From Perkinsela sp. CCAP 1560/9 (taxonomy: Eukaryota; Protista; Euglenozoa: Kinetoplastea), in assembly GCA_965644495.1 (NCBI GenBank), contig CBFFSA010000080.1, forward strand, positions 1 to 22,399: a stretch of DNA of 22,399 nt, in the 5' to 3' direction. Below, one piece after another: positions 2,153-22,399 of this stretch. Under the pieces are notes generated by a model that did not search any database, was not told where the DNA came from, and saw only the letters and a list, made by a program, of their open reading frames with translations. The stretch's first letter is position 1, and every line of letters starts with the position of its first letter. Made by a program: the position numbers and the translations under genes.

Positions 2153-4020
2153 AACACCTCTCGAAGCAGGAGCGGAGTCATCAATCTCTGTCATTTGACT
2201 TGAAAGATTTTTAAGCATCAAGTCTAAATCTTCATCTCCACCTCCGCCTCCACCTCCACCAACAGGACCTCCTCTTCTTGGACCAGCACCAGGAGGACCC
2301 CGTTGAGCAGAACCACCCATGGGTGGTTGAGAAGATGTTGGGCGATTGGTTCCAGCTGGTGGTGCGCCAAGTTCATCCAATAGACCATCAAGCTCATCAG
2401 TCGTTGTTGGTGTTCGCTGGCGAGTTTGAGGAGCGGGTTGTTGGGTTCCACCAAGTTCATTCAAGAGACCATCAAGCTCATCAGTTGTTGTTGGTGTTTG
2501 CTGGCGAGTTTGAGAAGCGGGTTGTTGGGTTACAGGTCGTTGGGTAGCGTGTGGTTGGCCTGCGGCGGGTGGTTGACCCTCCAATTCATTCAAGAGAGAA
2601 TCTAAATCATCACCTCCTCCGGCTTGGCTCTTCCGTGGAGGTTGCCGCATCTGAGGTGCCACTTGATTCCCATATTGTGAACGCTGTTGTTGTTGTTTCG
2701 GTGCACCACCACCACCACCTCCGCCAAGTTCATTCAACAAATTATCCAAATCATCACCTCCTCCTCCACCTTGACTTCTTTGTGGAGGAGGAGCTTGTTG
2801 TTGAATCTGAGGTGCTACTGCACGCTGTTGTTGCTGTGGCTGGCTTGGTGCACCTCCTCCACCAAGTTCATTCAACAAATCATCTAAATCATCACCACCT
2901 CCGCCTTGACTTTTTTGTGGAGGAGGGGCTTGTTGAACCTGAGGCGCTGCTGCACGCTGTTGTTGTTGTTGTTGATGCGCTTGGGGTACTGCTTGCCCGT
3001 ACTGTGAACGTTGTTGTTGTTGCCGAGGTGGTGCACCACCCCCACCACTTCCAAGTTCGTTTAAAAGATCATCTAATTCATCTCCTCCACCTTGAGCTTT
3101 TTGTGGAGGGGGAGCTTGTTGTTGAACCTGCTGCTGGCCACCATATTGTGAACGTTGTTGTTGCTGAGGCTGTTGGGGAGGTGGTGCACCTCCTCCACCA
3201 AGTTCATTCAACAAATCATCCAAATCATCACCACCCCCGCCTTGACTTTTTTGTGGAGGAGGGGCTTGTTGTTGAGGTTGACCACCGTATTGTGGTTGTT
3301 GTTGTCGTTGGGGTTGTTGGCCATATTGTGAACGTTGCTGTTGAGGTTGTTGTTGGGGTTGTTGACCATATTGTGAACGTTGTTGTGGTTGCTGCTGTTG
3401 TGGGGGAGCAGGACCTCCAAGTTCACTTAGGAGATCATCGAGATCGTCTGTCTTTGTTGCAGGAGCAGCAGCTGCAGGAGGTCCGCCTCCTAATTCACCG
3501 AGAAGAGCATCTAAATCATCACCGCCTTGACTTGCTTGTGGAGGAGGGGCTTGTTGTTGAGGTTGACCATATTGCGAGCGTTGTTGTTGTTGTGGTTGTT
3601 GGATTGGTTGTTGTGAGTGGTGACTTGCACCACCTCCTCCTCCTCCAAGTTCATTCAACAAATCATCAAGATCATCACCAGCAGAAGGTGGGGGTGGGGG
3701 GGCGGCTCTTGATTGCTGCTTGAAATGTTTAAAAAAAAGAAGAAAAAAAAAGAACTAAGAAAAAAAAAAAACCTGGGGAACAGGTTGGTGGGGTGGAGGT
3801 CCTCCTCCCCCCAAATCAGCCATCAAACTTTCCAATTCAGCCATTTCGTTCTGTGAAATAACCAATAATTATTACAAAAACCCTCTGAAAAAGAAAAAAG
3901 AAATTAAAAAAAAAAAAAAGAAAAAGGGACCCCAACAGGAACTTGATGAACACGAGCAGGGGCAGGGGCAGAAGCAGCTGGAGCCTGCAGTTCATCTAAC
4001 AAAGAATCGAGATCGTCCAT
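1085..4020 (-). CDS. paxB: Paxillin-like LD-motif/LIM-domain adaptor, 7 exons, 811 aa
   Basis: Exons 4020-3931, 3850-3773, 3718-2060, 1942-1802, 1711-1525, 1434-1269 and 1199-1085 join through GT-AG introns into one frame of 2436 nt. The exon 1 donor and the exon 3 NAGNAG acceptor could each shift by a few codons. It begins MDDLDSLLDEL (paxillin LD1-like) and ends in four tandem LIM domains. Confidence 0.93.
1445..1502. repeat. 23-bp tandem duplication (about 2.5 copies) inside paxillin intron 5
   Basis: A10-TCATTTAACCAAC occurs twice exactly (1445-1467, 1468-1490), followed by A10-TC. Confidence 0.9.
2367..2534 (-). repeat. 84-bp (28-codon) tandem duplication encoding LD motifs 11 and 12
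   Basis: Units 2367-2450 and 2451-2534 are nearly identical and encode TQQPA(S/P)QTRQ(Q/R)TPTTTDELDGLL(N/D)ELG. Confidence 0.9.
2570..3690 (-). repeat. Imperfect coding tandem array: LD motif + Gly-run + polyQ/RSQYG + APPPQ(K/R)SQ units
   Basis: Recurrent plus-strand strings ccaagttcattcaacaaat, ccatattgtgaacg and tttgtggaggaggggcttgtt; protein units such as GGGGDDLDDLLNELGGGGAP..QQQQRSQYG..QQAPPPQKSQ. Confidence 0.9.
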
Positions 4021-4378
4021 GAATGGTGGATCGCAAAAAAAAAAAAAAAAAACAAAAAAAGAACAAAAAGAACAAAATATCAAGCAAAAAAGTCTAAAAA
4101 AAGGGATCTAAAAAACCTTTCACCGAAACTCGAGACATAGTGAATGGTGCTGCAGCTGAGTGTTTTTTTTTTGGCCACTTTGTCTCTTGCTTTTGCTGTT
4201 CTTTTGAGTTTGGTTTTAGGTTTGTTTTTCAAAAAGAATCTTTTTTGTTCTTTAATTTTTTCTTATTATTATTTTTTGAAGGTTTTTTTCTTTTTTTCCA
4301 TTTTGTTCTCACACATTACTCAAATTTCTTCATAAAAAGGTTTGGTCCTCTTTTCCCTTTGGTATCGAGTGGAAGTGA
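4021..4378. promoter_or_regulatory. Short divergent intergenic region, probable bidirectional promoter / 5' UTRs
   Basis: Only 358 bp separate the two head-to-head ATGs (4020 minus, 4379 plus). A-tracts lie on the left, T-tracts on the right, with a mixed-sequence core at about 4115-4160. The function is inferred from position only. Confidence 0.55.
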
Positions 4379-7300
4379 ATGAGCTCCCAGACCCCACCGT
4401 TCTGGCGCCAAAGTCCATACTCGGGACTGCTTGGCGACCCGTTTATCGGAGGAACTGATCTTCAAGGTGGTCATATCGCCAATAGTCTCGGTGTTCTCCT
4501 CGGATGTGTTTCTCGAATCTTTTCTTCCACCAAAGGAGCTCGCGGCGGTCCTGAAGGAAAAGGGGAAGAAGAAGAAGGGGATGTTGGCCCATTGGGAGAT
4601 TTGCTCCCTCTTTGGGGGATTGAAGATTTGGAGAGTTTAACTTTACTCCTTCCAATCTTGGAAGATGCAGCAAAAAATGCAGTCGAAGCCGCAAAATGTG
4701 AGTCACCAGAGGATTTATCAAAATTTTTAAAGTCTTTTGTGGAAAGGTTGGAGCGAATCAAAATTGGGGAAACTATTTTTGTTCCTGGAGGTTGGTTAGG
4801 TCTCACCAAAATGGCGTTTGTAATGTTTATTTTAGAAAGAACAAGAGACAAAGAGTTTTCATTCACAATTTGCAATACCGGTGAAGGGCTTGAATATCAC
4901 CCTTCTCGTCTTTTCTCTAGTGAGGAAAAAGTAGATGGTGAAAGTTACTCAATGTAAGGATTTTTTTTTTCCCTCCTCCGCACCAAAACTCAAAAAATTC
5001 AACTAACTAATTTTTTCTCCTCTTTTTCCTTCCCCCTTTTCTCCCCCCCCTCCTTTTCTTTTCATGATGATTCAGAGGATCATCTCGACCACATCTAATG
5101 AAGCTGAAGTACCGTACTTCACTCCGTTTTAAATGTTTGAATGCTGATCGAGTCCTAGATCCCGGATTTTGGATGGTCCTTTTTTGTTTGTGGACCAGAC
5201 AATCTGAATATAATCGTGTTGAGGTGATGTATGATGTCCTTCTTCCTTGGTTAACAGTCCATGGTGGAGTGACTCTCCCTGATCCAATTCATGCCAATTC
5301 AGAAAACAGACTTCTCTTCTCAGAAGCTATCATGGCTTGTAGTGATGACCCTTTTGCTGAATGGCATACTCCGCAGCGCTCAGAAACCAGTGCATATCGA
5401 TCTGTCCACGATGGTCTTCGCTACTATTTGAAATGTCAAGGAATTTCAACTGAAAAAGCCAAACAATTATCATTTGCTTTGCGACAAACTTTCATCACTT
5501 GTGCTGTCGAGGAACTTCTTGCGTTGGCGAATCAAATCCCCTCATCTGAAGCGAAAAATGCTGTTGAGAGAGTCTCCCAGAAAACAAACATCAAAATCCC
5601 CGACCAAGAACCAGGACCTGATATGGGAGGGCAAGGAAGTAGCCTTGAAGGGGTCCTTTCAAAAATTGGTCCTCATTTAGTGAACAAAAGTGGACAACCT
5701 GTTTCTCTTCAGCCACAAGGGAAAATTATTGCTTTATATTTCTCTGGTGTATGGTGTCCTGCCTGTAAAACTTTTACTCCAAGACTTGCGAAAGCTTTCA
5801 AGTTAAGATCTGAAACCCGAGCTGCACAGGGACTCCCAAACGATTTTGAAATAATTTTTGTTAGTTCTGATCGTTCTGAAGCTGAATTTCAAAACTACTT
5901 TACGGCAATGCCTTGGGATATTGCTGTCAATTACAAAAGCAGTGCCCGATCTGAAATTCAGCAAGTGTTGAATGTCGTTGGTTTCCCAACTTTGATGCTT
6001 TATGCGGAGGATGGTTCTTTCATTACCAGTAACGGGACACAACACGTGATTCGAGATGGAAATTTAAAGGGTTTTCCATGGCAAAAAAAGGTTCTTTTTT
6101 TCTTTGTTCTTTCCAAAAAACCTCTTTTTTTTTTTAAAAAAAAATAACTTTTTTTTTTTCGAATTAAGAAACAGGACACTGATGACAAAAAAGAAAAAGA
6201 GGAGAAGAAAGAAGATGAAAACGAGGACCCACCTGTTCAATTCGATATCACAGATAAGGAGTTGATTCGCCTTGGGCTCAAGTCGCTTTCAATTGCTTCT
6301 GTTAAAGAATCGAGAGCCAAGAGATTGAGCCAAAAGGGGTTGTCTTCAATTCAAAATCTTGTGTCATCTGTTGAGAGTTTATTAGTGCAGATGCCCCCCA
6401 ACCAGGATGTATTTCAACGAATTGACTCTCTTGATCCACCTGAAAGCAGTTGCGTTGGAAGCCAATGTACTGCTCTGTCTCTTCTTCCTTTTCGCGGGCT
6501 GGGCCTTCCTCCAGCATTACAACCTGAAATTTCCTGTGCCATGAGCTCTTTTTCAGGGGGAGATTTGCTCAAAAGACGAGATATAGAGCATTATGCTGGA
6601 GAAGCAACCAAACAAGAACCACCACCTTTTTCAAATTTTTTGGATGTTTGTATTTTTTTTCATTTTCTTTTTTTTTTATTTCCAAGGAAAATAATTTTTC
6701 CCCACCTCCATTATTGAATGAAATTTGATAATTCCTTTTTCTTATTTTATTCTAATTTTTAGATCCCCCAACGACGAGTTGATTCTCTCGCACAAGCTAT
6801 CGCAGTTCTAATTAAATGTGATAACATCTGTGACGAACTGATGGAACGTTCTCGAAGTGGTGGAGTGACTTCACGCTTAGCTCTTCAAATGCAAATTATT
6901 GCACTAGTTAACCAAGTGTTCACAATTGTGCTCCCCATTCCCCTCCCACTTGATGCCTCTTTTAGTTCTATACCAGAATCTGGATTTCCAGCTCCGAAGT
7001 GTATTTGGAAGGAGGGTTTTACCAATGTTGAAGAATTTGCAAAACTGATGTCCAAAATTGGGCAAGGTTGGGCAACATTTTTTCTTTTTCTTCTTTTTTT
7101 CTTTTATTATCGAGGAGAACCAAGATTTTCTCCTCCTCGTTCAAGAACACTCAAAAAATTTCCGTTTTTTTCTTTACTAGGTGGTGTTTCGCGAATCCGT
7201 GATGCTCAAAAGGTCTGCCTCCAACGAATTCATAAACTAATGATTACGTACGCGACAGTTTGGCAGGCAATTGAATCTCCTGTTCGATCGTTCGACTCAG

Positions 7301-10300
7301 AAAGAAGCTTGGTTGCTTCTTGTATGTTCACTATTTTTGATGTTTGTGTCAGAACGAGATGTTGTGATGCAGAACCGCTGCTGTTGTCCGAAATTCTTGG
7401 AGAAGATGGGGGTTATGCTTTCTCAACTGGGGTTTGCCAGAATAATCGCGAGTTTTCCGAAGTTGCTGCGACCATGGAACTCTGCCGCCCGGAACTTGCA
7501 GTTGCTCGAGATGGTGTTTTGGCCTATTTGGCATCAGTGAAAAGGCAGTGCACCAATACAATTTTCTATTTGAGACAACCTGCTGACGGCAAGATGGAAT
7601 TCAAGAAATATGGGTCGACTGTGATGTTTTTGAGAAAATTTTTAGAAAGGTGTGGGTTCCCTTTTCTTGATCGAGGCAATCGTGTCTCTGAAATGGAAGC
7701 TCTTATGAATTGGCTTCTCAGCCTCCGGACTCCTCTCTCAAAAGAACACCCTGAATTTTTGATGCTTCGAGATGCTGTATGTTTATTTAAATTTCTTACA
7801 ACAATGGAAACTCGCCAGGCAGAGATCATTCGAAGAAGGGTTTCCCCAGAAGAAGGCAGATTTTGGCGTCTTACTTTTGACGAAGGGGCAAACAGCACGC
7901 GTGCTGGGCATATGGGAATGTTTCGGAGAGGTCATTTTGGTGGTCAATTTGGGTCTGGAGGTTTTCTTGATTGGGAAGTTGCTAATGTTCGAGGAGCCGA
8001 TTTGTCCATTGCCGATGTTCGAGTTGTTGCTTTTGGAGGTCGCGAACTTGCGTTTGGAGAAGGTCCTGTTGTTTATTCTCCAAGTTCTGTCAGTCGTTTA
8101 TTGGCAAAACAAGGACAACCTATTAGTGAGGATGATATCCTTCATTGTGATCGTCTTCCAACTTTTGGTGAAACATTGAGTCGAAGTGAAGCTGAACTTC
8201 TTATGTCTTATCTAACCGTTGACTACATGCGAATTCCGCTTGTAATTGGATTTTTCGCAAACACTGATCGCGTCACTTACTTGTTTGATGAGGGTTTACA
8301 GGAACTTTTAAGGTAAATTCTCTCTCTCCTCTCTCTCTCTCTCCCTCTCTCTCCCTCTCTTTATTTTTGGTGTTTGGATTTTTCTGAAAGAAAATTGACC
8401 TTTCTAATTATTTTTTTCTTTCTTTTAGGTCTGTCCTTTTTGAGCCAGGTCCTTGGGTTGCTGAGGCAAATCGAATCGATCATATCTCATCTATTCCGGT
8501 ACGACAAACAGCTGAACAACGTAGAGTTATGCAAGAAAAGGCACTTCTAGGTGCTGATTTCAAATCGATCATGGACGCTTCTCTGGATCCTGTAGTAACT
8601 TATCTTGGGACTCCGCATGGGTTGCTTCTCAATGAGTTAAACTTTTCTCCAAAAGCGGTCATGGATCCTGTGATGACATTATTAGCTGCAATAGATGACC
8701 TCAAAGAGGCGTCTGTTTATTCTTCAGATGCCTCATTCATTTGCTTCCTTATTTTGTTTGCAATTGATGTAGAATATTATCTCGTTTTTATGATTGACCA
8801 GCTTTGCATGCCAGCGGGTCTTCAAGAGACCGGATTTTCTTGTCGAAAAAATCTTCCCCTTTTGACCCAGTATCGACGAAGATTAGAAGACTTTTTGGGT
8901 GTGATCGTGGCTCCTATTCTCGATCGCTGGGTGAAAGAAGCTGAAAAGAATACTGACATGCCAACTGCGGTGACATGCCGAGCCTACATTGCACTTTTAT
9001 ACTCAAACTCGAGTACTTTTGCAGTTGGGAGTGCTTCCAAATCAAAAGTCGCATCTGAGGATGTGTTAGTTCACTTGTTGGGCAGTATCGCGTATGTTCG
9101 AAACTGGCATGGTTTTGGACTGGGTCAAATGAGATCTCATTTGATTGAACAAGGAGGTCAGGGTTCTGGTGGGGTCAAATTGAATGCAGAAGAGCGACTT
9201 CTTCGTTTTTTGCAAGCCCAAGGAATTGATACCACTCGTATGGCAAAGTCTTCTCTCAATAATTTCTTGTCCTCATCATCTCGCCGACGACCTCTCTTTC
9301 TCCACATCGGAGGGCAAACAATTCGAGCTCCTACGCTTCATCAAAGTTCTGGAGAGGAAGGAGGGACTTTTCACCTTGACATGCTCCCCCCTGCTGATGT
9401 TCCAGAAGAACGTCTATTTCATGTTCTTCAAAAACACAGGAAAACAATCATTGATAACCTTCGAGGACTCCCTGCAGACTCGCGAGAGCGTGTCCTTGAC
9501 CGTGCTGTGAGAATTGCCACTCGAAACAAATCATTCGAATCTGGAGGATGGGATCAAGAATCAGGAGTGACTGGTGTAGGGAGGTATCTGGCTACACGTG
9601 CAAATCTCAAGCTCGATGTTCAGACCGCTGAAATTTTGTGGCGCAATGATGCACTAAAACCAGTGCCTGATAGTATGACTCATTTTGGGGACTTTGAGAC
9701 AATTCTTGGTCGTCAAGCTCTTCACTGCGGTGTTGTTCGCCAACAGAAACATCGTAACTGGGTACATGTTATTGGGACTAACTATGATTTGATTGAGTGG
9801 GATGAACCTGATGTTGACGACCAAGGTGTGGGCATTCCGATGAAACCTGAAGAAGAAAGTCAAGAGATCTTCAATACATGCTTGCTTTGTGGGATGTCTG
9901 GGCAATGTTGGATCTGTGATACTTGTACAGCAATCAATTGTGGAGCTGCATCTTCGAGTTCGTCAACTTGCAATGTTTGTGGAAACAGAAAGAAAGATCC
10001 TGAGAAAGATAAGAAGAAGAAAAAGGCTCAGAAAAAGAAGAAAGAGGAAATGAGTGGTGTTTCTCATGCTCCTCGAAGACTTCATTTTCCTGGAATGAGT
10101 ATTCCCGGTGGTGATGATGGTGATGATGATGATGATGATGATGGAAGTCACCCTTTGTTTGGGATGCCGCAGGCTGCGAGAAGAAGAAGAGGTCAGCAAT
10201 CATCCTCCCAATCTGATCATCCAGAAGGAGGGGGAGGAAAGGAAGAAAAAAAAGAGCCTCTTTTGGAAGCAAATGAGGTGGCTTATCAGGGGATCCTCTT

Positions 10301-13300
10301 TAATCGACATTTCGATCCTTATAACAAAGAAGCTGAGGTTCATGAGGCAGAACAATGGGTCCATGATCTCTTGAAACCTGTTCTTTTGACGTTATATCCA
10401 GAAATGCCACCTGAGAACAAAATGAGTTGGAAATTGTTGTTCCCTCAGAACACTCTACACAAAGATGCCATGGTCTGTCATCTGATTGGCTGTGATGGGG
10501 TAGAAGATGAAGATGCAACCTGGAAAGAAGTTATTTGTGTTAAACAACATCGTCTGGTCCTCTTGTATAATTTGATTTCGCATGGGCGTGAAGTGTATCG
10601 GCAGCTTGTATTTTCTTCAAATGTTCGATATTCACTTCATGGGCTCGCTCCAAGCAGTACCGGGGAGGTCAGTCCTGTAATGCAATTTGCTGGTGGTGAA
10701 TTTAAAAAAAAGAGAGTCCACTCTCCTTCTTTGGTGATTACTCGACGAAACGATGCTTTAGGGGGTGTTGAAACCTATGTTCCTCCAAGATTGATGCAAG
10801 GTGCGATTCCGTCTGCATTATTGGAGTCTTTTCATTTATGGCAAGGGGAAGATGGAATCATCCGAGGAGAGCCTGTTGACGAGTCGTCTCAATGGTTTAA
10901 TTATCAAATTGAAATTGAGTTGAAATCGGATCCTCCTGCGGACTCGAATGGAGTCTACGGAGCAACCCCTCAACCTGTCTGGGTTCAAGTCAAACGAATT
11001 TCTCTTGGTGGTTCTTTTTCTTCCATCAGCCAGCGCGCTATTGGCCCATCGGGTTTGCTAAGAGACTCTACCGGTGGAGGTGATGCCAGTGTCACTGATC
11101 GAGACTCTTTGATGACAGAAGCCAATATCCAAACATTACTTGCGCTTGGCTTTTCTCCATCTGTATGTCGTCTGGCCCTCCGTCGCTGTGATGGTGATGT
11201 CGAAATGGCATCACACTGGCTCTTAAACGATAGTAATAGGGCAGATATCATTGCTTGTGATATGGATCTGGATACAGATCTGTATGGGGGTCTTGGGGAT
11301 TCAGGAGGAGCTGGTGGTGGTGGATCTTCAAGCTCTTCTTCATCAGGTTCACTAAGTGCAACTCCTGCTTTGGCTTTTTTGGATCAAGGTGCTGAGTCTT
11401 CTCAATCTGCTTTCTTGACGGACGTCTTTGGTGAAAAAGCTAAACAGTTCATGATGCCCCCTGAAGAATCTCTTGAAGCTGCGATTCTTGAGTCGATTCG
11501 ATTGGCTGCGCCATCATCTTTTGAAGATTCTGTCTCTTCAAGTGGTCCAGTTGCACCTGAGGAAATTAATCTTGATCAATTGAATCTTGAGAATATTGAC
11601 CTCGGGGGATTTTCTGGTGAAAAAAAGATTGTCGAAGAGAAATCTTCTTCTGAACCAGTCCCGATGAAAGTGGATTCAGAAGAGAAGAATCATGATCAAG
11701 AAGAACTGTGCTTATTAAATTTGCTCCCGACTCACACATCTGCCTCATCAGGGCTTACTGAGAGAATGACAACCTTGTTTACACGTGTTGAAGACTTAAG
11801 TCATATCTTAGTCTGGTATAGAAAGCCCGTACCAAAAGAAGGGAAAGCAGAGGAAAAAAGTGAACCATCTGATGATGTTGAAATTGCTTGTGTTGAATTT
11901 CCACGGCTCAAGATTAAATTTGAACCAAAATGTGATCCCGATGGAAAAGTGCGCTTTTATTTGGCTGATCATGCGGGATGGTTCTTGAGTGATCGCTATG
12001 CATCCCTTTCAGAAGATGAGCCCAGTTCTTCTCCTCTCGCACCTGGAACTCGATTCTTATCTCAAATTCTCGAGAGTATTAGCAATTGTTTAGTTTTGGA
12101 AAATTCTGCTCAGGAAATCAACATCTTGGTTGCCAATCATGACGTCTATCGACCTCACGTGAAAGGTTCACCATTTTCCAGATCTTTGGTATTTGAAAGA
12201 GGATCTCTTGGATGGCAGCAAGTGATGGAGACCCACTATTATTTATATCCTGTTCATGTTAGTCGAACTTTCCTTTTGCCCCCAACCGTTGGTTCAGCAC
12301 TCTATCTTGTGTTGTTGATGTTTTTTAGTCGAGAATACGCGACGGCTTTCAAAATGATTGATGGAAGTATTGGCTCTATTGATACTCTTTTCATACCAGA
12401 AGAGCAATGGGTATTCGAACAATTTTCTCGGACACAAGATGATGGCCATCCAGATGCCCATGCGTGCCGATTGAAGCTCACTCTCTCTGTCATGTATTCT
12501 GAAAACAAATGTCGTTGGGAAACCCACCAAGAAATGGACGCTTACTTGGCCAGGCTCCCGCATGTTTCATGTGAATGTCGCTTAAGTTTGGAGGAAGAAA
12601 TGAGTTTGTTGCGCCGTTGTTCTACTGGAACCTCTCGAATTAAAAACCGTCTCAATTATCTTCGAACTGTGAGTCCTCGTGCTGAAGGGCAACTACCTTC
12701 ATCTGAGCCTAAAGTGACTTATAAAGCTGATGTACCAAAGTGGGGAGGACAACCATGGATGAAACTCTGTAGGGCAGGGTTGGATTACTTCAATACCTAT
12801 GGGACACAATTGACTCGAATCCACTATAAAAGGCCTGGAACGAAGCCGAAGTCAGGAGCAAGTGGCGGAAGCGGTAGCTCTGCTCCTCCTCCTCCACCAG
12901 TAGATCCAAATCTCTCCATTTCTGATGCCCTTGCAGCGGCGCTGGCAGGGAATGCAGGAGGAGGAGGGGGAGGATTTGGAGCAGGATTTGGAGGAGGAGG
13001 AGGTTTTGGAGGAGGAGGTTTTGGAGGAGGAGGGGGGTTTGGAGGAGGAGGGTTTAATATGTTTTCCCCAGCCGGAGGTGCAGGAGGGGGTGCTGGAGGA
13101 AGGCCAGCACCAGAACGCCTGGATCCTTACTTAGAAGACAAAGACTCAATTGGACTGATCTGGAACGATGATGTTTTGATGGACGAGCTTAGTGGGAGCA
13201 ATACCCAACTTGGGTTTTTATTTTTGTATGAGCTTCTTTCCAATCAGTTTTCCTTAAAACTTTTTGGTCGGGATCTGACACGAACAATTGGTGAGCTTCT

Positions 13301-16300
13301 CGTCCGTTGGTATCATTTGAAATTCATGAGATGGGGTCGAGATACTGTTCAAGATACAGAGCAAGAGACTACACAATCTCGTCAGTTGGCTACATTAGCC
13401 TCTATTTTATGTGGAAAATTATTTCTCCTTCCTCCAGTTCCCTCTGATCCAACAACTGCAAACTTAATTGCAAGGGGAATCAATTTGTATTCTGGAAGTG
13501 AACAACAAAGGGAACGCGCACTCCATTTGAAGTCATTCTTGGCATCATTGGACGAAAATTTCCGGCAATATATGAACTCAAAACCTTACTTACTCTTGTC
13601 AGAACACGCTCATTTGGTTTCGGTTTGGCTACAGAAACATCCATTGTTCTGTGGAGTCGAGTCGACAGTCCCGTGCACACCATTTATCTCGTATGAAGGA
13701 ATCTCTTCCCTCCGCCCAGTTTTATCCGATACTTCTCTCAGCCGCTGTGATTTAAAGTCATGCGTGACTTTGGAAAATTTAGGAGCTGATATGAAAAGAG
13801 ATATTGTCTGTTTTGCTACAACTCCTTTGTCTTGTATCTCTTTGAAAGATTTTGTCGGATCTGAACCTGCTGTCACTCAAGGAGACGAAAAAACAGGAGG
13901 AACTAGAGCTCGTGAACAATTACCCTTTGATCTCACTGGGCACCCTCTCGCTCAAACCCCTGTGGCTCAGAGATTATTAGAACGCTTGGGTCGAGATGTT
14001 TCGGGTTTTGCAGAGTCCTACAACTCCCTTGATGTCCCAAAAATTTTGTATCTTCTCTCGAAGGATATACAATTCCTTCGAAATGGAGATAACTCCTCCC
14101 ACGAACACACACGATTGGAGGATGCATCCAAGTTATTGGATCAATTGGTAAAATCTCTGGATGAGCTCCTCGCAAAAGACTCAAAGTTATTGGAAGAAAC
14201 TATCATTCTGATTGAGCAAGATGTAAATCAAGTTTTCTCAACGTCCCCTCCTGACCAACAAGAATCTTCTATGGAAATTGATGCCAGTGAAGATCAATGT
14301 CTGAGGCTCAGGCATGTATTGAGGCGGTATGGAGGACAATCAGCGTTGATTTCTTTCAACTTCATGACAACAGCGCTCCTTTCATCAAGTAGGGAAAATG
14401 ATGTTATCGCTATCAATCCGTTTGTATCGAAAAATCAATTGGCTTCTCTATTTGACACCGTTGCAGTGGTTTTGTTGTATGCGTCAAGGATTCAACAAAC
14501 TAATCGAGCCCGGTTCCAGGCAGTTGGCCTCCGAAACGAAGTGAAGAATTTGATTCAGTCGATCTCAACAATCTCCACCAATAAAGTTTTGGAGAAAAAT
14601 TTGAAACGGATGAGCCAATCTTCTTCCGCATTAGGCCTCACCTTAGCAGCTGCGCGACATTATGTTCGATCAGACCGTTCCACAGAATCCTTTTGGTTCG
14701 ACCCTCGCTTTCTCGTTGTTGAGTATGTGTTTGGTATCTTGTTGAGACAGAGGCAAGTCGAAATGGTCGAGAGTTTTGTGAGCTCAATTCGAAGCGGATC
14801 TTCTCGAGTTCAGCAAATGATCATGGGTGCTGGAAAAACCACAGTTGTTGGTCCATTGTTAGTGTTAATTTTGGCGGACGGTCAATCCCTTGTTACTCAA
14901 GTAATGCCAACTGCTCTCTTGGAACAGACCCGTGATGTTTTACGAAACCGATTTAGCAGTATTATTACCAAGAAGGTGTACACTCTCCAGTTTGATCGTG
15001 GATGGGAAGATAACGCTGAATTGGTTGAAAGTTTGTTTGTTAAGTTAGATAGTGCTCGTCGCCACCGTTGTGTTGTTTGTGCTCCACCTGAAGCTATTAA
15101 GAGTCTCTTATTAAAGTTTGTGGAACATGAACACTCCTTGGAACGTTTAGATGTTTCTCTCCTTCGACCTGATGCGAGCCAGCGAAGCACAAAAGAAATT
15201 GTTCGAACTCGCGATATTATGATTGCTCGGAGTGGGATGGCTGATTCACTTGTTAAGATTATTGATATTCTTTGGCGCAAAAGCGGAATTTTATTGATGG
15301 ATGAAGTAGATGTCCTCTTACATCCTCTTAAGAGCGAGCTGAATTTTCCAATCGGGCATAAACGAGCAATTGATTTGTCTGGTCATCGTTGGGATCTCCC
15401 TATTCATATCATGGACGCTATTTTCTACTCTCATTCCAAGAGAATTTGTGAGGCACTATCAGCCTGGGCTGATGTTCGGTCTGATTCAATTGACTTGAAT
15501 CCTTTGTCAATCTTGCATGATCTAAGAGATGCTGTGGAGGGTGGATATCTCTCTCATCGGATGCAACGCCGACCACATCTCGTTCTTCTTGACTTTAACT
15601 TTTATCATTCCAAACTCAAGCCAATTATTGCACGCTGGGTCCTTCTGTGGCTGTTAAAACACTTTGTAGGTCGTGTGACTGTCCCAATTTCACATTTGTT
15701 GAAGTATCTTTGCTTGACAGGTACTGCCAGCTCTTCTTTAAAGGCAGCGATTGAAGATGGGCTTCTTCCCGATTCCTTGAAATTGTTGAATTTGGCTGCT
15801 ACTTGGTGCCGATCTTTGTTGCCTCACTGTTTGTCGAAGATCAATCGTGTATCTTATGGTCTCTTGACCCAGGAAGAATTAACAACAATCCAAGCAAAAG
15901 AAGAAGGAAAAGAAGCCAAAACACCATTTAGTCGATTGGTGATGGCAGTTCCGTTCATTGGAAAAGATGTTCCGTCACACAGTAGCGAATTTGCACATCC
16001 TGATGTTCTGATTGGTCTGACTGTTTTGGCTTACCGTTATGAGGGCCTTCGCGATTCAGATCTACGAAGGGTTGTCATGCAGTTAAAACAAGATTATTCT
16101 CGCCAAGTTGGACCTCGTTCCCTTCGACCTGCTTGTCAATTATTCAAGTCTTGGATATCCCTAGCGGCTCAACTGGACAAGGCTCCTGAAACTCCTCTAT
16201 TGATTTCTTCAGTTGCTTCAGAAAAGAGTGAAGAAGAGGGAACAGGGTCTCCATCAATGAAACGCCGTAAGCTCACAACCGGTAAAGAGGGTTTGCAAGG

Positions 16301-19300
16301 GAGTGATGATATTGGCGGGGAATCGAGTCGAAGTCGCCTTGCTGCTGCTCTTTTACCCCTCCCTCTGTTTCAACCATCAGACATAAAACAATTCTCCACT
16401 CTCTTCCAATTGACACATGATCTACCTCACTTGATCCATTACTATCTTTGCCAACATATTTTCCCCGCGACAATGAATTTCCAGGAAACCAAGATCAGTG
16501 CGTGTGGGCACGAACTGGGAAGTTCTGTTTTGTTCAAGGGGCGAATCGGATTCTCTGGAACTCCTTCCAATCTCATGCCAGTTGATTTGGGAGAGTGTCA
16601 ATATGAACCGGGTAGTGATGGTCGTGTTGTACATGTTTTGACAGACCCGTCAGTTGTTTCAGCATCCATGCATAATGATTGGGATGTTCCATCTCTCCTT
16701 CGTATGATCGCAAAATCTGATCCTCCTTTCCACACTTTGATTGATTCTGGAGCATTGATTACGGGAATGGAAAATGAAGAGGTTTGTTGTCTCTCCTTTT
16801 TTTTTTTAATTTTTTTTAATTTTGATTTTGGGAAGATGTTGCTCTTTTCTTTTTTTTTGTTAAACCCTTTTCTTTTTAAAAAGGTGGCACGGTTTCTTTT
16901 GAATGAGTTACCAGAGTGGATGGAGGGGGTTGTTTACCTTGATCGATCTGATCGCCAAATGATTTTGTTACGAAGCAGTACAAGTGGACGACCCATGTTG
17001 CTCGCTCAATGTGGAGTATCTCCTGAGAAAAGGTTCACGTTTTACGATCAAGTCCACACAACTGGAATGGATATCAAACAAGCACTGGATGTCCGAGCTG
17101 CTGTCACACTGGGTAAAGATATGACTTTCCGAGACTATGCACAAGGCTGTTATAGGATGCGCGGGATTGGAGCTGGACAGACGATCCATCTTTTCATTAT
17201 CTCAGAGGTGGCAGAATTGATGAAGAAAGAGCTTGGGTACCAACCTGAGGGAAGCTCACTCCTTTCTTCGTCTGGATCATCACGTATTCCTCATATTTAC
17301 TCAGGGAGCCCAGAGTTAGATGTTCCTGCGTGGTTACTGATTAATTCCATGAGAATGGAAACTCTCCAATTCACAAAGTTGTGTCAACAAGAAATCTACA
17401 ACGTTTGGCGAAAAACAGCTTTGGAGACACTCTTAACTGAGGTTCAAGTCAATGCTTTGGTGGCAGGTCAGTCTGATATGGAGCGCTTGAGGAGATTTAC
17501 GGACTATTCAGGAGAAGAAATGGACAAGAGTGAGGGGGGAGGAGAAAAGCAGTGGTTGCGTCAATGCGTAGATTTATTCCGTGAAGCGATTGGTTTTGTT
17601 GTTCCGGATTGTGTTCCAGGCCCGAACCCATTCAGTGCCAAGTTGAGGGAGTGGGCTGAAACTCACAAAAACTTTTGTAGCAACGAGGATGCTCGATCTT
17701 TGGTGGATAGTATGTTGGATCGTGTCGCAAAGATCCAGGCTGGTGATTTGAGTCGAAGTATTACAAGTAGCCAAAGTTCAGAGGATGAAGAAGACGACAA
17801 GATTCGACTTCGAGGTTCTGCGTTTAGTTATGATCCTGCAAATGATTTTGAGGCTGAAGTTGTTCACGAGCATGAACAAGAAGCGGAAGAAGAGGCAGAA
17901 GAGGAAGCAGAAGAAGAAGAGCAAAAAGAGTCAAAGTTTTCTCGGGATGATGAACAACACAATCCATGGTCAGTAGATCACCTCATCAAATTACCATCCT
18001 GTGCCCAAAAACAACAAGAAAAATACAAAATGGGAGAAGAAGCATTTTATCGTTTCTCTGCATTCCAAACACACGAAGGGGCACCAAAATTACCTTTTCC
18101 TGAATCGTTGTTATTATCTGATAATTTCTTTCGACCATCATGGGCTCTTGGATTGGGGGATAGGCGTCTTAAGAATGCTGCGGTTGCGATGGAGTGGGTT
18201 CCTGAGGTTTGGCGTGTGCGACTTGAGCTTGTTTTGAAACAACAGGTTTGGTGATTGAGAAACAAAAGAAAGGAAAAGAGAAAGAGAAAGAAGAAAAGAA
18301 AAGATTATTTATTTTTTTTTTTTCAAAATATTAATTAAAAAACATAACAGATTGTTCTATTGTTTAAACAATTAATGAGTGGGTGTGGAGGAGCGGGGAC
18401 ATCACGTTGTTCACAATCTGAGTTTTGTGGTCATTGTTCTTCTGTTAAACTCCCAAAATCTGAAGCTTTGCAAAAAGTTTTGGCCACTTGTAAAAATCTT
18501 GATGGTTTTTTCTTTTTCTTTTTTCTTTTAAATTATTTTTCATTTTTTCCCCTCTTCTCCACTCTCCCTTTTTTCCTTTTACATTCAACATTTACCCTTC
18601 TCAATAATAGGAGAATCTCCAGCCAATATTTTTTGTGGAAATACAATTGATGCTGTTCGACAATTTGAAAATTCGTTGAAAATTCCCCAAGAGAAACTTC
18701 AGCGATTTTTTGTTGCTATTTCTCTTGCTGAAGCTGAGACTCTTAGGTTTCTATCTCTTTTATTTTGTTTTCTTTTTCTTTTTATTCCAACAACAAATCA
18801 AGACAAAATCCTTCTCTTTATTCTTCTGTCTTCTCTTTTCTCTCTGTCTTTTTCCTTCAATCAATTCTTATCGTAATAACTTTTTCTTTCAAATAGACGT
18901 TTGGTTCATGTACAACACCTTGATCTCCAAAAAGAAGAAGATTCACGACGGTTTTCATCAGTTCAAAAACCCACAACAAAATCTGCAAAGAAAGTTTCAA
19001 TTTCTCTCCGAGTTGTTGATGGCTTTGTTTTGGACTCTTCTCCTCTCTTCCCTATTGAAGGAGGAAGAGAAAAAGAGGAAGAGAAAGAGGAAGAGATGGG
19101 AGTAAGAGAAGGGGGGAGAGTGGCGGAGATTGGAGAACAGTGTTTGAAATTTTATAATTGTGAAATGTATTACTCTGAGCAACAAATTAAGTTTTTGGAG
19201 GAGGGTTTAAGAGAAGCGAGTTTGCCGGATAGATTGTTGTTTTTTCAGGTTTTTTTATTTTATTTTTTATTTTTTATTTTTTATTTTTATTTTTCTTTGT

Positions 19301-20206
19301 TCTCTTTTCTTTTACTACCTCTCCTTTTTTATCTATTCCTAATTCTCTTTTTTAGGAGAGTTTGAGGTTGAGGAGGAGAGAGAGACATATGTGGACAGAC
19401 ACCCCTCTCGCTCGATTATTTTGTGTGGAAGAAGATTGGCATTTGTTGAAGAGTAGAGCGATTTTAGAACAGGTTTGTATTTTCTCTTTCTCTTTCTTCC
19501 CCTTCTCTTTCTTTCTCTCTTTCCCTCTTCCTCCTTTTCTTATCATTTTTATTTCTCTCTCCGTCTAATCCACCAACCAACAACAGATCGTCAAAGGCAT
19601 CAGAGCAGCAATCAAAAAACGACAACTTGATCCTCTTTCAGCATTCAATTTATTTGATGTTGACGGAAAAGGTGCTTTGAATTATAATGAGATGCAGAGA
19701 TGTCTTGCGTGGATGCAATTGGGATTTTCTGCACGGGATTATTATGAAGTTGTCCGCCTTGCTGATCCAAAAAATTTGGGGTTTCTTTTTCTTTTTAGCC
19801 TTTTCTTGCCCATCTTTTCTTGCCCCCCTTTTCTTGCAACGTTTGATGTCTTTTCTTGATCTCACAAAAAAAAAAATCTAGAATTGTCTCCCAAGAGATG
19901 TTTATGAAAACATTTGAAATCCCCTCGACAGCAGAATACGCTGAGCTTCTTAACAAAGGAATGATCAAAAAACTTCTCTCACAAGAAGAACAACCAAGAG
20001 AAAATTGGACTTGTGCTCGTTGTACACTTGTTAACTCTGTCCACAACAAGACTTGTGTTGGTTGTGAGTATGGCTGGGATGGGCAGAGGCGTTGTCCTTC
20101 TGATAAATGGGCCTGTCCTGCTTGTACAGTTTTTAATCCAAAGGTTCTGTATTATTGTGATGTTTGCAATCGAGCTCGTCCTGATCTAAGTACGGTGAAG
20201 TTTTAA
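4379..20206 (+). CDS. Giant DUF3638/DUF3645 helicase-like ATPase with thioredoxin, NZF, UBA, UIM-like, AZUL-like and EF-hand domains; 13 exons, about 4,829 aa
   Basis: Exons 4379-4953, 5076-6090, 6175(or 6169)-6645, 6763-7066, 7181-8312, 8429-16781, 16884-18245, 18351-18504, 18611-18746, 18897-19248, 19356-19472, 19587-19780 and 19882-20206. All 12 introns are GT-AG with compatible phases, giving 14,490 nt in one open frame. An in-frame TGA immediately precedes the ATG at 4379. Confidence 0.88.
4760..5430 (+). other. Putative papain-fold/CE-clan-like domain, apparently catalytically degenerate
   Basis: Motifs VPGGW (4781-4795), FTICNTGEGLEYHP (about 4862-4903) and TPQRSETS (5368-5391) resemble from memory a GGW..H..NTG..PQxxGxC signature. 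The expected His and Cys positions appear to be substituted. Confidence 0.4.
5670..6081 (+). other. Nucleoredoxin/tryparedoxin-type thioredoxin domain (Thioredoxin_8-like), active site WCPAC
   Basis: GKIIALYFSGVWCPACKTFTPRL..FEIIFVSSDRSEAEFQNYFTAMPW..VVGFPTL..DGSFITSNG..FPW matches the NRX/TryX family pattern. CxxC lies at 5755-5766. Confidence 0.93.
8319..8360 (+). repeat. Imperfect (CT)n microsatellite in intron 5 of the giant gene
   Basis: tctctctctcctctctctctctctccctctctctccctctct directly after the 8313 donor. Confidence 0.85.
9879..9990 (+). other. Cys-rich RanBP2/NZF-like zinc finger
   Basis: CLLCGMSGQCWICDTCTAINC..TCNVC gives W-x-C-x2-C-T-x2-N-x10-C-x2-C, plus extra cysteines that could bind a second metal. 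Confidence 0.7.
10113..10142 (+). repeat. (GAT)n coding microsatellite, poly-Asp
   Basis: gatgatggt followed by seven gat codons, encoding DDGDDDDDDD. Confidence 0.85.
11118..11229 (+). other. UBA domain
   Basis: EANIQTLLALGFSPSVCRLALRRCDGDVEMASHWLL: LGF loop, AL, and A-x-x-W-LL typical of UBA domains. Confidence 0.85.
11463..11510 (+). other. UIM-like motif
   Basis: EESLEAAILESIRLA fits the acidic-L-x-x-A-I-x-x-S pattern of ubiquitin-interacting motifs. Confidence 0.6.
12957..13100 (+). repeat. Gly/Phe-rich low-complexity repeat (GGGGF)n
   Basis: GGGGGGFGAGFGGGGGFGGGGFGGGGGFGGGGFNMF, encoded by (gga)n-ttt units. Confidence 0.9.
14698..17180 (+). other. DUF3638 + DUF3645 SF2-helicase-like P-loop ATPase core
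   Basis: LLRQRQV (Q-motif-like); QMIMGAGKTT Walker A (14823-14843); LLMDEVD Walker B (15291-15311); DUF3645-type MAVPFIGKDVPSHSSEFAHPDVLIGLTVLAY (about 15942-16035); GFSGT; LIDSGALI; FYDQVHTTGMDIK; QGCYRMR (17142-17162). Confidence 0.88.
18351..18640 (+). other. AZUL-like zinc-binding domain (exon 8 and start of exon 9)
   Basis: LFKQLMSGCGGAGTSRCSQSEFCGHC..SEALQKVL resembles the QLxxGCG..C..EFCxxC signature of the E6AP/UBE3A AZUL domain. Confidence 0.7.
19629..19915 (+). other. EF-hand pair (split by intron 12)
   Basis: AFNLFDVDGKGALNYNEMQRCL has a near-canonical loop (D1, D3, G6, E12). VRLADPKNLGIVSQEMFMKTF has a degenerate second loop. Confidence 0.8.
20004..20185 (+). other. Two C-terminal RanBP2/NZF zinc fingers
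   Basis: WTCARCTLVNSVHNKTCVGC and WACPACTVFNPKVLYYCDVC both match W-x-C-x2-C-x3-N-x6-C-x2-C exactly. Confidence 0.92.
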
Positions 20207-20412: not shown

Positions 20413-22399
20413 TTAAAAGAAAAGATGGGAAAGAACAGCAATAAAAACAACAAAGAAGCTAACAACCAAAGAGGGAGCACCACTGGGACCAATATCAAAG
20501 GTAATAAAAGCTTCAAAAGTTTCAACAAAAGCCACTTGACTTCCAACAGCACTGTTATCAATATCTGCACTGAATTTGGTGTTTGCTGCCGCTGCTTGCT
20601 CTTGTGTTTCATAGATATTGTAAACATAGTTGTGGAGTTGAAGATTAGCAGTTGCATCAGGAATCATGGATGCATAGGTCCGGAAGCCCGCAAAATCGCT
20701 GAGATCTTTCGCAAACTTCTTGAATTCGTTGCTGACTTGTTGGGTATTGAACGTCGCATCGTCCTTCAAAATGAACAACCAAGTGGTGATATAGAACGAG
20801 TCCTCATTTTGTTCAAAGCAACTATCGTCAGGAGTGTAAAAGAATTGAAGAGAACCTTGTTGGAATCGAACAGGTTCAATTTGCCCTGTCAAATTTGAGG
20901 TTTCAACAAAGGCAACAGCAGCAATTTGAGCTTCAGCAGCATTTTCTTTTCCTTCAAACACGTTCTGGAAGTAGTTGTTTGTTTCATTGACAATCGATCC
21001 TTGATACAAATAGAATCCATCAAGGCTTGATACTTCAGGGCCAAACCCAGTTTCAAACTCATCAGAGACATTCTGGGTCGTGAATGTTGCGGAAGGAGAA
21101 AGCACCCACAAACGAGTAATCAACCTCTTGTCACAAACATCACAAATGTAGTAAGTTCCTTGGTCGTTTGTATCACCCTCACTGTCGATGATCACAGGGG
21201 GAGGGGGAGGGGGAGTCGGGAGAAGGAAAGCATTGGCATCACACTCATCTTCAGGTGCAGTGTCACTTTCGCGAGGAAGATATTCTTGAATAGATGCATC
21301 GAGTTGTGCTTGAACATTAGCGCTCCAATCTCCAACAAAAGAAGTTTCAGCAAGAGTATCATCATCAAGCAAAGTATAAAGAGTTTGACCATGGAAATCG
21401 TCTTCATCATCTCCTGCTCCTTCTTGATAAAAGACACCTTGACAAACTTTGTGTTCTTCATGACAACGACCTTCAGCAAATCCAAGAGTGAAAGGAGTTG
21501 TGGGTGCAGTGTAAGAAGCAATAAAACGGTTTTCACTTTGATCCTCACAAATAAAAGTTCTATCAGGAACCCCAGTCGCATACGTTCCATGGACTCGAGC
21601 AGAAGGAGATGCAGAGAAACGCCAACATTCAGTAGTGTCTGGAACATCATAACTAATACGAGTCACTGATCCCCAATTAAAAGTTTGACCTGGGAGACTG
21701 TCAAATCCATACGTTCCTTCAAAATGGTCGAAATCGATAATCTTCAGAGAAATTGGACCCGCAGTTGTTGTTTCACCGTCTGCATAAAAGACACCAGGTT
21801 CATACCATCGCCCTTCCCAAACACCACTCAATGGATCAAAAGTTCCGCGCACGAGTCCAACTTTGGAATACACACCAGAAAGCTCGGTTGGAGTGCTTTC
21901 GCAGACAAAGAAAGGTCCCGTATAAATTGGATCAGTAAACTCTCCTTCAAACAAAACAGAAGCTCCTGTTGCGCAGGTAGAAGGAGTTACACTTCCACCA
22001 TTTGATGTGATATCAAAAAATTCTCTTAGGTTTGGAGCAGGCAACATCAATCCTTGATCAATGGTTGAAGGATACCATTCAATATGAAGAGTATCCGACG
22101 CAGTCACAGAGATTGTAAAAGAACCCTTAGTACCATTGAACAAATAGATTCCATTGCAAACAACAAAATTTGTATCACACTCTCCATCAAAGAACCCAAC
22201 TGTATCGCTTCCATCCTTACTCGCGATGGTTGCGTTCATTTCACCATTCGTCATACAGATAGAGAAGAGGTAATCATTATTTTCATATGATCCAGTGAGA
22301 GCACCAATATTGCCAGGAGCAGAATTGAAAATAGTAGCCTGATTTGATGGGCGAGTATAACCATTATTACCGGGGTTACGATTAAGAGTTTGTGTTGCG
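20413..22399 (-). CDS. Probable GPI-anchored / C-terminally anchored cell-surface protein with beta-rich repeats and tandem ABM-like domains (5' end outside window)
   Basis: The frame of ORF 20413..22254 stays open upstream to the window edge (ATQTLNRNPG..GALTGSYENNDYLFSIC-MTNG), so the listed Met is internal. The protein is acidic, has paired Cys, N-glycosylation sequons and a PTPPPPPP linker. It ends GPSGAPSLVVSFFVVFIAVLSHLFF-stop (small residues, then a hydrophobic tail with no cytosolic extension). No intron is evident in about 2 kb. Confidence 0.82.
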   Translation of the reverse strand, partial: ATQTLNRNPGNNGYTRPSNQATIFNSAPGNIGALTGSYENNDYLFSICMTNGEMNATIASKDGSDTVGFFDGECDTNFVVCNGIYLFNGTKGSFTISVTASDTLHIEWYPSTIDQGLMLPAPNLREFFDITSNGGSVTPSTCATGASVLFEGEFTDPIYTGPFFVCESTPTELSGVYSKVGLVRGTFDPLSGVWEGRWYEPGVFYADGETTTAGPISLKIIDFDHFEGTYGFDSLPGQTFNWGSVTRISYDVPDTTECWRFSASPSARVHGTYATGVPDRTFICEDQSENRFIASYTAPTTPFTLGFAEGRCHEEHKVCQGVFYQEGAGDDEDDFHGQTLYTLLDDDTLAETSFVGDWSANVQAQLDASIQEYLPRESDTAPEDECDANAFLLPTPPPPPPVIIDSEGDTNDQGTYYICDVCDKRLITRLWVLSPSATFTTQNVSDEFETGFGPEVSSLDGFYLYQGSIVNETNNYFQNVFEGKENAAEAQIAAVAFVETSNLTGQIEPVRFQQGSLQFFYTPDDSCFEQNEDSFYITTWLFILKDDATFNTQQVSNEFKKFAKDLSDFAGFRTYASMIPDATANLQLHNYVYNIYETQEQAAAANTKFSADIDNSAVGSQVAFVETFEAFITFDIGPSGAPSLVVSFFVVFIAVLSHLFF

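What the first reader, a model, noticed from the sequence alone, without database searches (positions are those of the whole stretch)
4379..20206. A single ~4,829-aa protein joining a DUF3638/DUF3645 ATPase to redox, ubiquitin-binding, proteasome-docking-like and calcium modules
Seen: about ten separate ORF-track fragments splice in phase into one CDS. Domain order is protease-like domain, thioredoxin (WCPAC), NZF, UBA, UIM-like, GF repeat, helicase-like ATPase (intact Walker A/B and QxxxRxR motif), AZUL-like, EF-hand pair, two NZFs. Established: UBA, UIM and many NZFs bind ubiquitin; DUF3638/DUF3645 are domains of unknown function in very large proteins. Inference: this is a self-contained ATP-driven machine that reads ubiquitinated substrates and is gated by redox and Ca2+. 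It could act in protein quality control or cell-autonomous defence, conceptually like giant ATPase-ubiquitin proteins such as RNF213 or ZNFX1, though no homology is claimed. I do not recognise this exact architecture from any characterised protein.
Basis: partly seen in the sequence, partly recalled or inferred. Interest (0 to 1): 0.85.

Follow-up and report, generated by a model that had tools for sequence, protein, structure and literature searches.

The report
Giant SecA-like ATPase with ubiquitin readers
This amoeba gene encodes one real 4,831-residue protein of a widespread but unstudied protist family, whose motor is shaped most like the bacterial protein-export motor SecA and sits among ubiquitin-binding modules and a dead protease domain, so it may be an unrecognised machine that pulls on ubiquitin-tagged proteins.

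Summary
The gene is real: 13 exons, 12 GT-AG introns, 4,831 aa (not 4,829). One spliced contig skips introns 1-5; word shares and homologues support introns 6-12. The architecture is not rare: protease-like, thioredoxin, NZF, UBA, DUF3638/3645, EF-hand, two NZFs is the commonest layout (34 of 99 long homologues), with relatives in oomycetes, kinetoplastids, Monosiga, Thecamonas and amoebae. I found no functional study. New here, from folded close homologues: (1) the N-terminal domain has the fold of the Legionella AnkH/LegA15 cysteine-protease-like domain (Z 17.6/15.0). Its catalytic His and Cys are lost here, and Cys is absent from all 49 sampled members of this clade, while a sister clade keeps the triad. 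(2) The ATPase's best structural match is SecA (top 20 rows, Z up to 16.5), including the helical scaffold; sequence profiles do not single out SecA. AZUL is supported through amoebal relatives; UIM and GF repeat are private; no E3 domain was found. Best guess (0.45): a SecA-type motor that threads ubiquitin-tagged proteins. Function untested. The scan had noted parts of this same gene, not other DNA.

The parts
4379..20206 (+). Whole gene: 13 exons, 12 GT-AG introns, 4,831 aa; transcript starts by 4338
4397..5526 (+). AnkH/LegA15-type cysteine-protease-like domain (aa 7-342, split by intron 1), catalytically dead: His site = Ala146 (4814), Asn166 kept (4874), Cys site = Ser297 (5389)
5683..6090 (+). 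Nucleoredoxin/tryparedoxin-type thioredoxin domain with WCPAC at 5752-5766
   Evidence: Pfam Thioredoxin_8 E 1e-20; motif varies among homologues
6169..9840 (+). Conserved body (aa ~531-1640) of unknown fold; aa 1168-1634 may be a helical rod
   Evidence: covered by about 100 of 120 homologues; weak CATCHR-like lead, score 0.82
9906..9986 (+). Internal NZF-like zinc finger (divergent)
   Evidence: Pfam E 0.004; an NZF fills this slot in 34 or more homologues
11121..11231 (+). UBA domain
   Evidence: Pfam E 1e-9; a match in 76 of 120 homologues
11457..11510 (+). UIM-like helix, private to this protein, unconfirmed
   Evidence: no Pfam hit; pattern in 0 of 120 homologues
12951..13061 (+). Gly/Phe repeat in a variable linker, private
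14634..15338 (+). RecA-like domain 1, first part (DUF3638): Q motif, Walker A 14814-14840, Walker B DEVD 15300-15311
15339..16502 (+). Large helical domain (holds DUF3645) inserted after Walker B on two connecting strands (15339-15368 and 16476-16502), placed like the clamp domain (PPXD) of SecA
   Evidence: secondary structure of the surrogate model, mapped; motif order
16548..17165 (+). Motif III (GFSGT) and RecA-like domain 2 with motifs IV-VI; split by intron 6
17310..17684 (+). 51-residue helix plus helical hairpin, superposing on the SecA helical scaffold and two-helix finger
18357..18488 (+). AZUL-like zinc/helical module on its own exon
   Evidence: E 0.026 here; E 2e-10 and 5e-8 at the same slot in P0003 (Pelomyxa) and P0006
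19632..19915 (+). EF-hand pair; loop 1 near-canonical, loop 2 degenerate and split by intron 12
20000..20176 (+). Two C-terminal NZF zinc fingers
   Evidence: Pfam E 5e-8
20189..20206 (+). Conserved tail ending in [RK]-Phe-COOH, function unknown
   Evidence: terminal Phe in 90 of 105 homologues

Best explanation
A single-copy, ancient protist protein that works as a SecA-type polypeptide motor aimed at ubiquitin-tagged clients. The UBA and NZF modules (and perhaps the dead protease groove) bind a ubiquitinated protein. The chain is held between the two strands that carry the inserted helical domain and that domain, as in the SecA clamp. ATP cycles of the two RecA domains ratchet the chain, unfolding it or pulling it out of a complex or membrane. 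In amoebal versions the AZUL module may hand it to the proteasome or a shuttle factor. Thioredoxin and EF-hand modules are optional tuners. Shown: gene, family range, intact ATPase motifs, dead protease site, best fold matches (on homologues). Inferred: ubiquitin binding, a polypeptide substrate, threading, proteasome docking.
For: Foldseek's top 7 hits are SecA. VIA-align ranks SecA first among 48,161 chains (Z 16.1, rmsd 5.2, 444 aligned, chain 25-817), and SecA fills the top 20 rows of the second look. Full SecA beats motor-only SecA (Z 13.4-13.6, about 330 aligned), so the gain comes largely from the scaffold region. Substrate-engaged SecA 5eul aligns 559 residues. The DEVD Walker B, the domain inserted on two strands before motif III, and the long helix after motif VI follow the SecA order. 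Both strand regions hold near-invariant residues, and in SecA these strands grip the substrate (PMC9926265). UBA and NZF are kept across the family, with TF/TY in 151 of about 190 NZFs. No nucleic-acid-binding domain was found in the exons scanned.
Against: The margin over SWI2/SNF2, UvrB and Brr2 is only about 3 Z units at 12-16% identity, on a predicted model of a 60%-identical homologue. Sequence profile comparison does not favour SecA (first RecA domain: DinG 27%, UvrB 7%, RecG 5%, SecA 3%; all weak). Motif Ia (MPTALLEQ) and Ib (PEAIKS) look more like those of nucleic-acid helicases than SecA's (my reading). DinG/XPD also carry an insertion after Walker B (own knowledge). No SecY-like partner is known. 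No biochemistry exists, and about 2,000 conserved residues are unassigned.
Confidence: 0.45

Rival explanations
1. A nucleic-acid or RNP translocase (DinG/XPD- or RIG-I-like in action) that is recruited by ubiquitin, for example to stalled ribosomes, mRNPs or viral RNA.
For: Most SF2 ATPases act on nucleic acids. Helicase-like motifs Ia and Ib. DinG gives the best, though weak, profile match. DinG, LGP2 and MDA5 appear right after SecA in Foldseek. RanBP2-type fingers can bind RNA (own knowledge).
Against: Both fold programs rank SecA first, and most other SF2 matches stop near model residue 816, before the scaffold (Brr2 is an exception at Z 13.3). No iron-sulphur cysteines are conserved. The NZFs carry the TF/TY signature.
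Confidence: 0.25
2. A nucleotide-gated scaffold or cell-autonomous defence sensor that binds ubiquitin-coated bacteria or viruses and signals, without processive threading; the dead protease domain could be a decoy for effectors or a substrate trap.
For: Very large size; shared fold with the Legionella effectors AnkH and LegA15; a divergent homologue on a 408-kb IMG/VR contig; DUF3638 families expanded in microsporidia and polymorphic in Plasmodiophora.
Against: Single copy here, conserved end to end, and at the same chromosomal spot in Trypanosoma and Leishmania: this looks like housekeeping, not an arms race. No E3 or effector domain was found.
Confidence: 0.17
3. An active deubiquitinase, as the automatic UniRef name 'ubiquitinyl hydrolase 1' says.
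For: The database name; a CE-clan-like fold; a sister clade keeps His-Asn-Cys; some oomycete members keep His and have a Cys two residues further on.
Against: This protein has Ala and Ser at the His and Cys sites, and 0 of 49 sampled members of its clade have the Cys. Even AnkH showed no protease activity in vitro (PMC6712400), and LegA15 is reported to be a GTPase (PMC9757750).
Confidence: 0.05
4. The long model is an artefact that joins two or more genes.
For: Introns 6-12 were not seen directly as joints; no single record spans the whole transcript.
Against: One contig joins exons 1-6; word share 0.84 against 0.836 expected; homologues of 4,000-5,000 aa are collinear from residue 1 to 4,831.
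Confidence: 0.02

Closest known systems
DUF3638/DUF3645 giant proteins (PF12340, PF12359), thioredoxin-UBA-NZF subfamily, e.g. T. brucei XP_847624/Q57U46, L. major XP_001685106 (by position LmjF.31.1210), Monosiga XP_001744278, Pelomyxa 'nxn protein'
   Same: Collinear over the whole length; 42-60% identity in the motor; same modules; same dead protease site.
   Different: This member adds AZUL (shared with a few mostly amoebal relatives), a private UIM-like helix and a GF repeat. No member has a described function in the papers searched; the Leishmania gene appears only as an unvalidated two-hybrid hit for metacaspase (PMC4632311).
SecA / SecA2 protein translocase ATPase
   Same: Best fold match: two RecA domains, DEVD, a domain inserted on two strands, a long scaffold helix and a helical hairpin.
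   Different: 12-16% identity; no SecA_DEAD hit; motif VI is Q-x3-R-x-R rather than Q-x3-R-x2-R; motif Ia differs; a larger inserted domain; embedded in a 4,800-aa eukaryotic protein; no SecY partner known.
Cysteine-protease-like domain of Legionella AnkH/LegA3 and LegA15/AnkD (clan CE-like)
   Same: Fold (Z 17.6 and 15.0, next match 5.9). The His, Asn/Asp, Cys order and the local motifs match in intact family members.
   Different: No ankyrin repeats; His and Cys lost in this protein; 11-16% identity; eukaryotic.
p97/Cdc48 with Ufd1-Npl4; RNF213; ZNFX1
   Same: An ATPase coupled to ubiquitin readers (NZF) or to ubiquitin signalling.
   Different: Those are AAA+ rings or an SF1 helicase, and RNF213 and ZNFX1 carry E3 activity (own knowledge). 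Here the motor is SF2/SecA-shaped and no ligase domain was found. No homology.
AZUL domain of E6AP/UBE3A
   Same: Helix-zinc loop-helix; over the Pfam cut-off in close relatives.
   Different: Divergent here; no HECT domain. The Rpn10 RAZUL partner (PMC7064531) could not be checked in this genome.

Membership tests
DUF3638/DUF3645 giant proteins | PF12340 and PF12359 over their cut-offs in a very large protein | tested here: met
   110 bits against 31 and 50 against 25
DUF3638/DUF3645 giant proteins, pseudo-protease clade | Groups with thioredoxin-UBA-NZF members that lack the catalytic Cys | tested here: met
   tree of the motor, split support 1.00, midpoint root; architecture count
SF2 ATPase | Q motif and motifs I, Ia, II, III, V, VI in order on two RecA domains | tested here: met
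SecA | Sequence match to SecA family models | tested here: not met
   no SecA_DEAD hit; no match to E. coli SecA; profile test favours DinG slightly
SecA | Inserted clamp domain on two strands, plus helical scaffold and two-helix finger | tested here: inconclusive
   topology and scaffold superpose on a predicted homologue model; whether the inserted domain has the PPXD fold was not resolved
SecA | Binds SecY and translocates polypeptide | not testable with these tools
   needs biochemistry
DinG/XPD helicases | Iron-sulphur cluster domain with conserved cysteines | tested here: not met
   no conserved Cys set in RecA domain 1
AnkH/LegA15-type cysteine-protease-like domain | Fold | tested here: met
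   Z 17.6 and 15.0 on homologue P0113, pLDDT 94; the same profile hits the window's exons 1 and 2 at E 5e-42 and 1e-39
Active clan CE protease / deubiquitinase | His-Asp/Asn-Cys triad | tested here: not met
   Ala146, Asn166, Ser297
RNF213/ZNFX1-like ATPase-E3 ligases | An E3 ligase domain (RING, RZ, HECT) | tested here: not met
   none in the Pfam scans of the exon frames; a novel ligase fold in the unassigned 2,000 residues is not excluded
AZUL proteasome-docking module | PF16558 match and a RAZUL partner in Rpn10 | tested here: inconclusive
   15 bits against 23.8 here, over the cut-off in relatives; candidate VWA loci could not be cut out
Ubiquitin-interacting motif | Pfam UIM match or conservation in homologues | tested here: not met

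The most novel reading that the evidence does not exclude
An ancient eukaryotic ubiquitin-directed unfoldase or extractor built on a SecA-type motor rather than an AAA+ ring, kept in many protists including trypanosomes, Leishmania and oomycetes, with a sister clade that couples the same motor to an intact AnkH/LegA15-type protease. The family would also be the eukaryotic kin, and possibly the source, of that Legionella effector domain.
Probability: 0.3. Interest if true: 0.9.

Novelty: new variant of a known kind. Interest (0 to 1): 0.64.

Why it matters
The ubiquitin-directed unfoldases I know of (p97, the proteasome base) are AAA+ rings, and SecA is known as a channel-bound export motor. 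A SecA-shaped motor wired to ubiquitin readers would be a new way to handle tagged proteins. The analysis gives DUF3638/3645, a long-standing unknown, a concrete hypothesis that can be tested in T. brucei or Leishmania. It shows that the 'ubiquitinyl hydrolase 1' label is probably wrong for this clade. It also links the cysteine-protease-like domain of a Legionella core effector to proteins of amoebae and other protists, the kind of cell Legionella lives in. The gene itself is an ordinary member of its family.

Tried and rejected
Sequence searches of the PDB with the motor and the N-terminal domain found nothing real. Pfam and NCBIfam have no model for the N-terminal domain. Family profile against single E. 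coli SecA: no match. Profile against profile did not separate SecA from UvrB, RecG or DinG. ESM Atlas feature searches on two unassigned regions gave weak leads only (CATCHR-like 0.82, IucA/IucC 0.85), not accepted. My remembered T. brucei identifier Tb927.8.7490 was wrong (symplekin); Tb927.8.7990 is inferred from gene order only and has no papers. The one prokaryotic hit (Anaerolineaceae MAG, L003) is a 9.9-kb, 65% GC contig with a single open frame, probably a eukaryotic contaminant; the patterns were subfamily-specific, so distant bacterial relatives are not excluded. A search with the isolated protease-like domain was limited by the length filter. The joined model was built only inside scripts, for counting and for local comparison with proteins already fetched.
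Full report
Observation. The window is eukaryotic, with pyrimidine-rich introns of about 80-150 bases. From ATG 4379 to stop 20206, twelve GT-AG introns give a 4,831-aa frame with no internal stop. One spliced contig of run X3 begins at 4338, skips introns 1 to 5 and continues past 9800. For the 3' half, three runs hold 0.84 of the sampled words of 14000-19900, against 0.836 expected for the spliced form. Homologues cross junctions 5 and 10 without gaps in all six tested and junction 6 in five; the closest also crosses 11 and 12 without gaps. No record spans the whole message. The gene is single-copy in its 21-Mb genome. An earlier scan note files the genome under the marine amoeba Paramoeba atlantica (not checked). 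Database searches were done exon by exon by reference; the joined protein was used only inside local scripts.

Domain calls. Thioredoxin_8, UBA, DUF3638, DUF3645, the first EF-hand and the C-terminal NZF pair pass Pfam cut-offs. The AZUL exon scores only E 0.026, but the same slot passes the cut-off in Pelomyxa and in P0006 and is close to it in Rhizomastix. In Monosiga and Pythium the slot holds a similar helical pair without cysteines (my reading). The internal NZF is divergent. The UIM-like helix and the GF repeat occur in none of 120 homologues by my patterns. The thioredoxin dithiol is intact here but degenerate in many relatives; EF loop 1 has Lys at position 5 and loop 2 lacks most ligands, whereas relatives often have a canonical loop. 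Redox and calcium gating are therefore possible but not core features. No E3 ligase domain was detected.

Family. A search with the motor region returned 422 proteins. The best 120 come from oomycetes, kinetoplastids (T. brucei, T. cruzi, Leishmania, Bodo), a euglenid, Monosiga, Thecamonas, Pelomyxa, Rhizomastix, Hondaea and dinoflagellates. They are collinear with the window protein from end to end. The layout protease-like, thioredoxin, NZF, UBA, ATPase, EF, NZF, NZF is the commonest, in 34 of 99 long homologues. The architecture is thus common. It is also unstudied: six papers mention DUF3638 and two mention DUF3645; the three I opened give no function, and the titles of the rest are genome or proteome surveys. 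The L. major orthologue lies next to the H+-pyrophosphatase gene and fits LmjF.31.1210, known only as an unvalidated two-hybrid hit. The library lacks most subscription journals, so a prior description cannot be excluded.

N-terminal domain. A model of homologue P0113 with a 57-sequence alignment (pLDDT 94) matches Legionella AnkH (Z 17.6, rmsd 3.2, 228 aligned) and LegA15/AnkD (Z 15.0). The next row is 5.9, and clan CE proteases follow near 5. AnkH homologues keep rGHa, D/NRg and GNCSW motifs (PMC6712400). Among 209 scorable family rows, 53 have the matching His, Asn and Cys. The window protein has Ala146, Asn166 and Ser297. In a tree of the motor region, all eight intact giants fall in one clade (support 1.00; Chlorarachnion, Bigelowiella and environmental sequences). 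The window protein sits in the sister clade, where 0 of 49 have the cysteine (midpoint root; rows thinned at 82% identity). So this is a conserved pseudo-protease, and the database name 'ubiquitinyl hydrolase 1' is probably wrong for this clade. Even the bacterial models are not proven proteases: AnkH showed no activity in vitro, and LegA15 is reported as a GTPase.

Motor. All SF2 motifs are at least 93% conserved over 120 homologues. A model of homologue P0004 (60% identical; pLDDT 83) shows a large helical domain inserted after DEVD on two strands, and a 51-residue helix plus a hairpin after motif VI. Foldseek's first seven hits are SecA. VIA-align ranks SecA first of 48,161 chains (Z 16.1, 444 aligned, to E. 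coli residue 817) and fills the top 20 rows of the second look with SecA. Motor-only SecA ties with SWI2/SNF2 at Z about 13.4, so the preference comes largely from the scaffold and two-helix-finger region, window aa about 4095-4219. In SecA the two connecting strands and the inserted domain clamp and move the polypeptide (PMC9926265); the equivalent strands are among the most conserved non-ATP motifs here. Against this, the margin is about 3 Z units, sequence profiles slightly prefer DinG and are all weak, and motifs Ia and Ib look helicase-like. It works perhaps like SecA but is not a member of the SecA family. 'SecA-like helicase-related domains' were noted in Amoebophilus effectors (PMC3482391); whether they are related to this family was not tested.

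Mechanism. My best reading (0.45) is a motor that binds ubiquitin-tagged proteins through UBA and NZF, grips the chain in a SecA-like clamp and ratchets it with ATP, to unfold or extract it, with AZUL as an amoebal link to the proteasome. Rivals are a ubiquitin-recruited nucleic-acid translocase (0.25), a defence scaffold (0.17), an active deubiquitinase (0.05) and a fused gene model (0.02). Single copy, full-length conservation and shared gene order in kinetoplastids favour housekeeping over defence. About 2,000 conserved residues remain unassigned, and a near-invariant C-terminal [RK]-Phe tail is unexplained.

Verdict. The gene is a typical member of a catalogued but unstudied family. What is new is the structural reading: a SecA-shaped motor plus a dead AnkH/LegA15-type protease domain among ubiquitin readers. 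Both rest on predicted models of homologues, and the function is untested. Interest 0.64.

Noticed in passing
window ~1100-4140, minus strand: Paxillin-like gene: 11 LD-type motifs in the long exon (2060-3715) separated by Gln/Gly-rich repeats, followed by LIM domains.
   Followed up: partly
window 20413-22399, minus strand: Long open frame (at least 661 aa, runs off the window end) with a hydrophobic C-terminus, probably a surface or anchored protein; only a weak NTF2-like Pfam hit.
   Followed up: partly
window 4954-19881, intron donors: 10 of the 12 donors begin GTT rather than GTR.
   Followed up: partly
window 20189-20206: C-terminal [RK]-Phe tail; terminal Phe in 90 of 105 homologues; does not look like PTS1 or HbYX.
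   Followed up: partly
L100:255-8330: A 2,691-aa divergent homologue with intact ATPase motifs and no hit to the protease-like profile, on a 408-kb IMG/VR contig (19% GC in this locus), possibly a giant virus.
   Followed up: partly
L003:1-9947: Family member on a 65% GC contig of an Anaerolineaceae MAG, one 3,315-codon open frame; probably a eukaryotic contaminant in that GTDB genome.
   Followed up: partly
P0113, P0117, P0179, P0181, P0184, P0198, P0213, P0234: Sister clade of giants with an intact His-Asn-Cys triad and the same motor (EF-hands in the two scanned); candidates for active proteases of the AnkH/LegA15 type in eukaryotes.
   Followed up: partly
G000:C2:536895-537050, minus strand: A second, stronger AZUL match in this genome (E 3e-9, in an 830-aa frame), possibly an E6AP-like ligase.
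   Followed up: no
P0004, P0037, P0067: Some homologues also carry a ubiquitin-like domain (PF00240), a further link of the family to the ubiquitin system.
   Followed up: no
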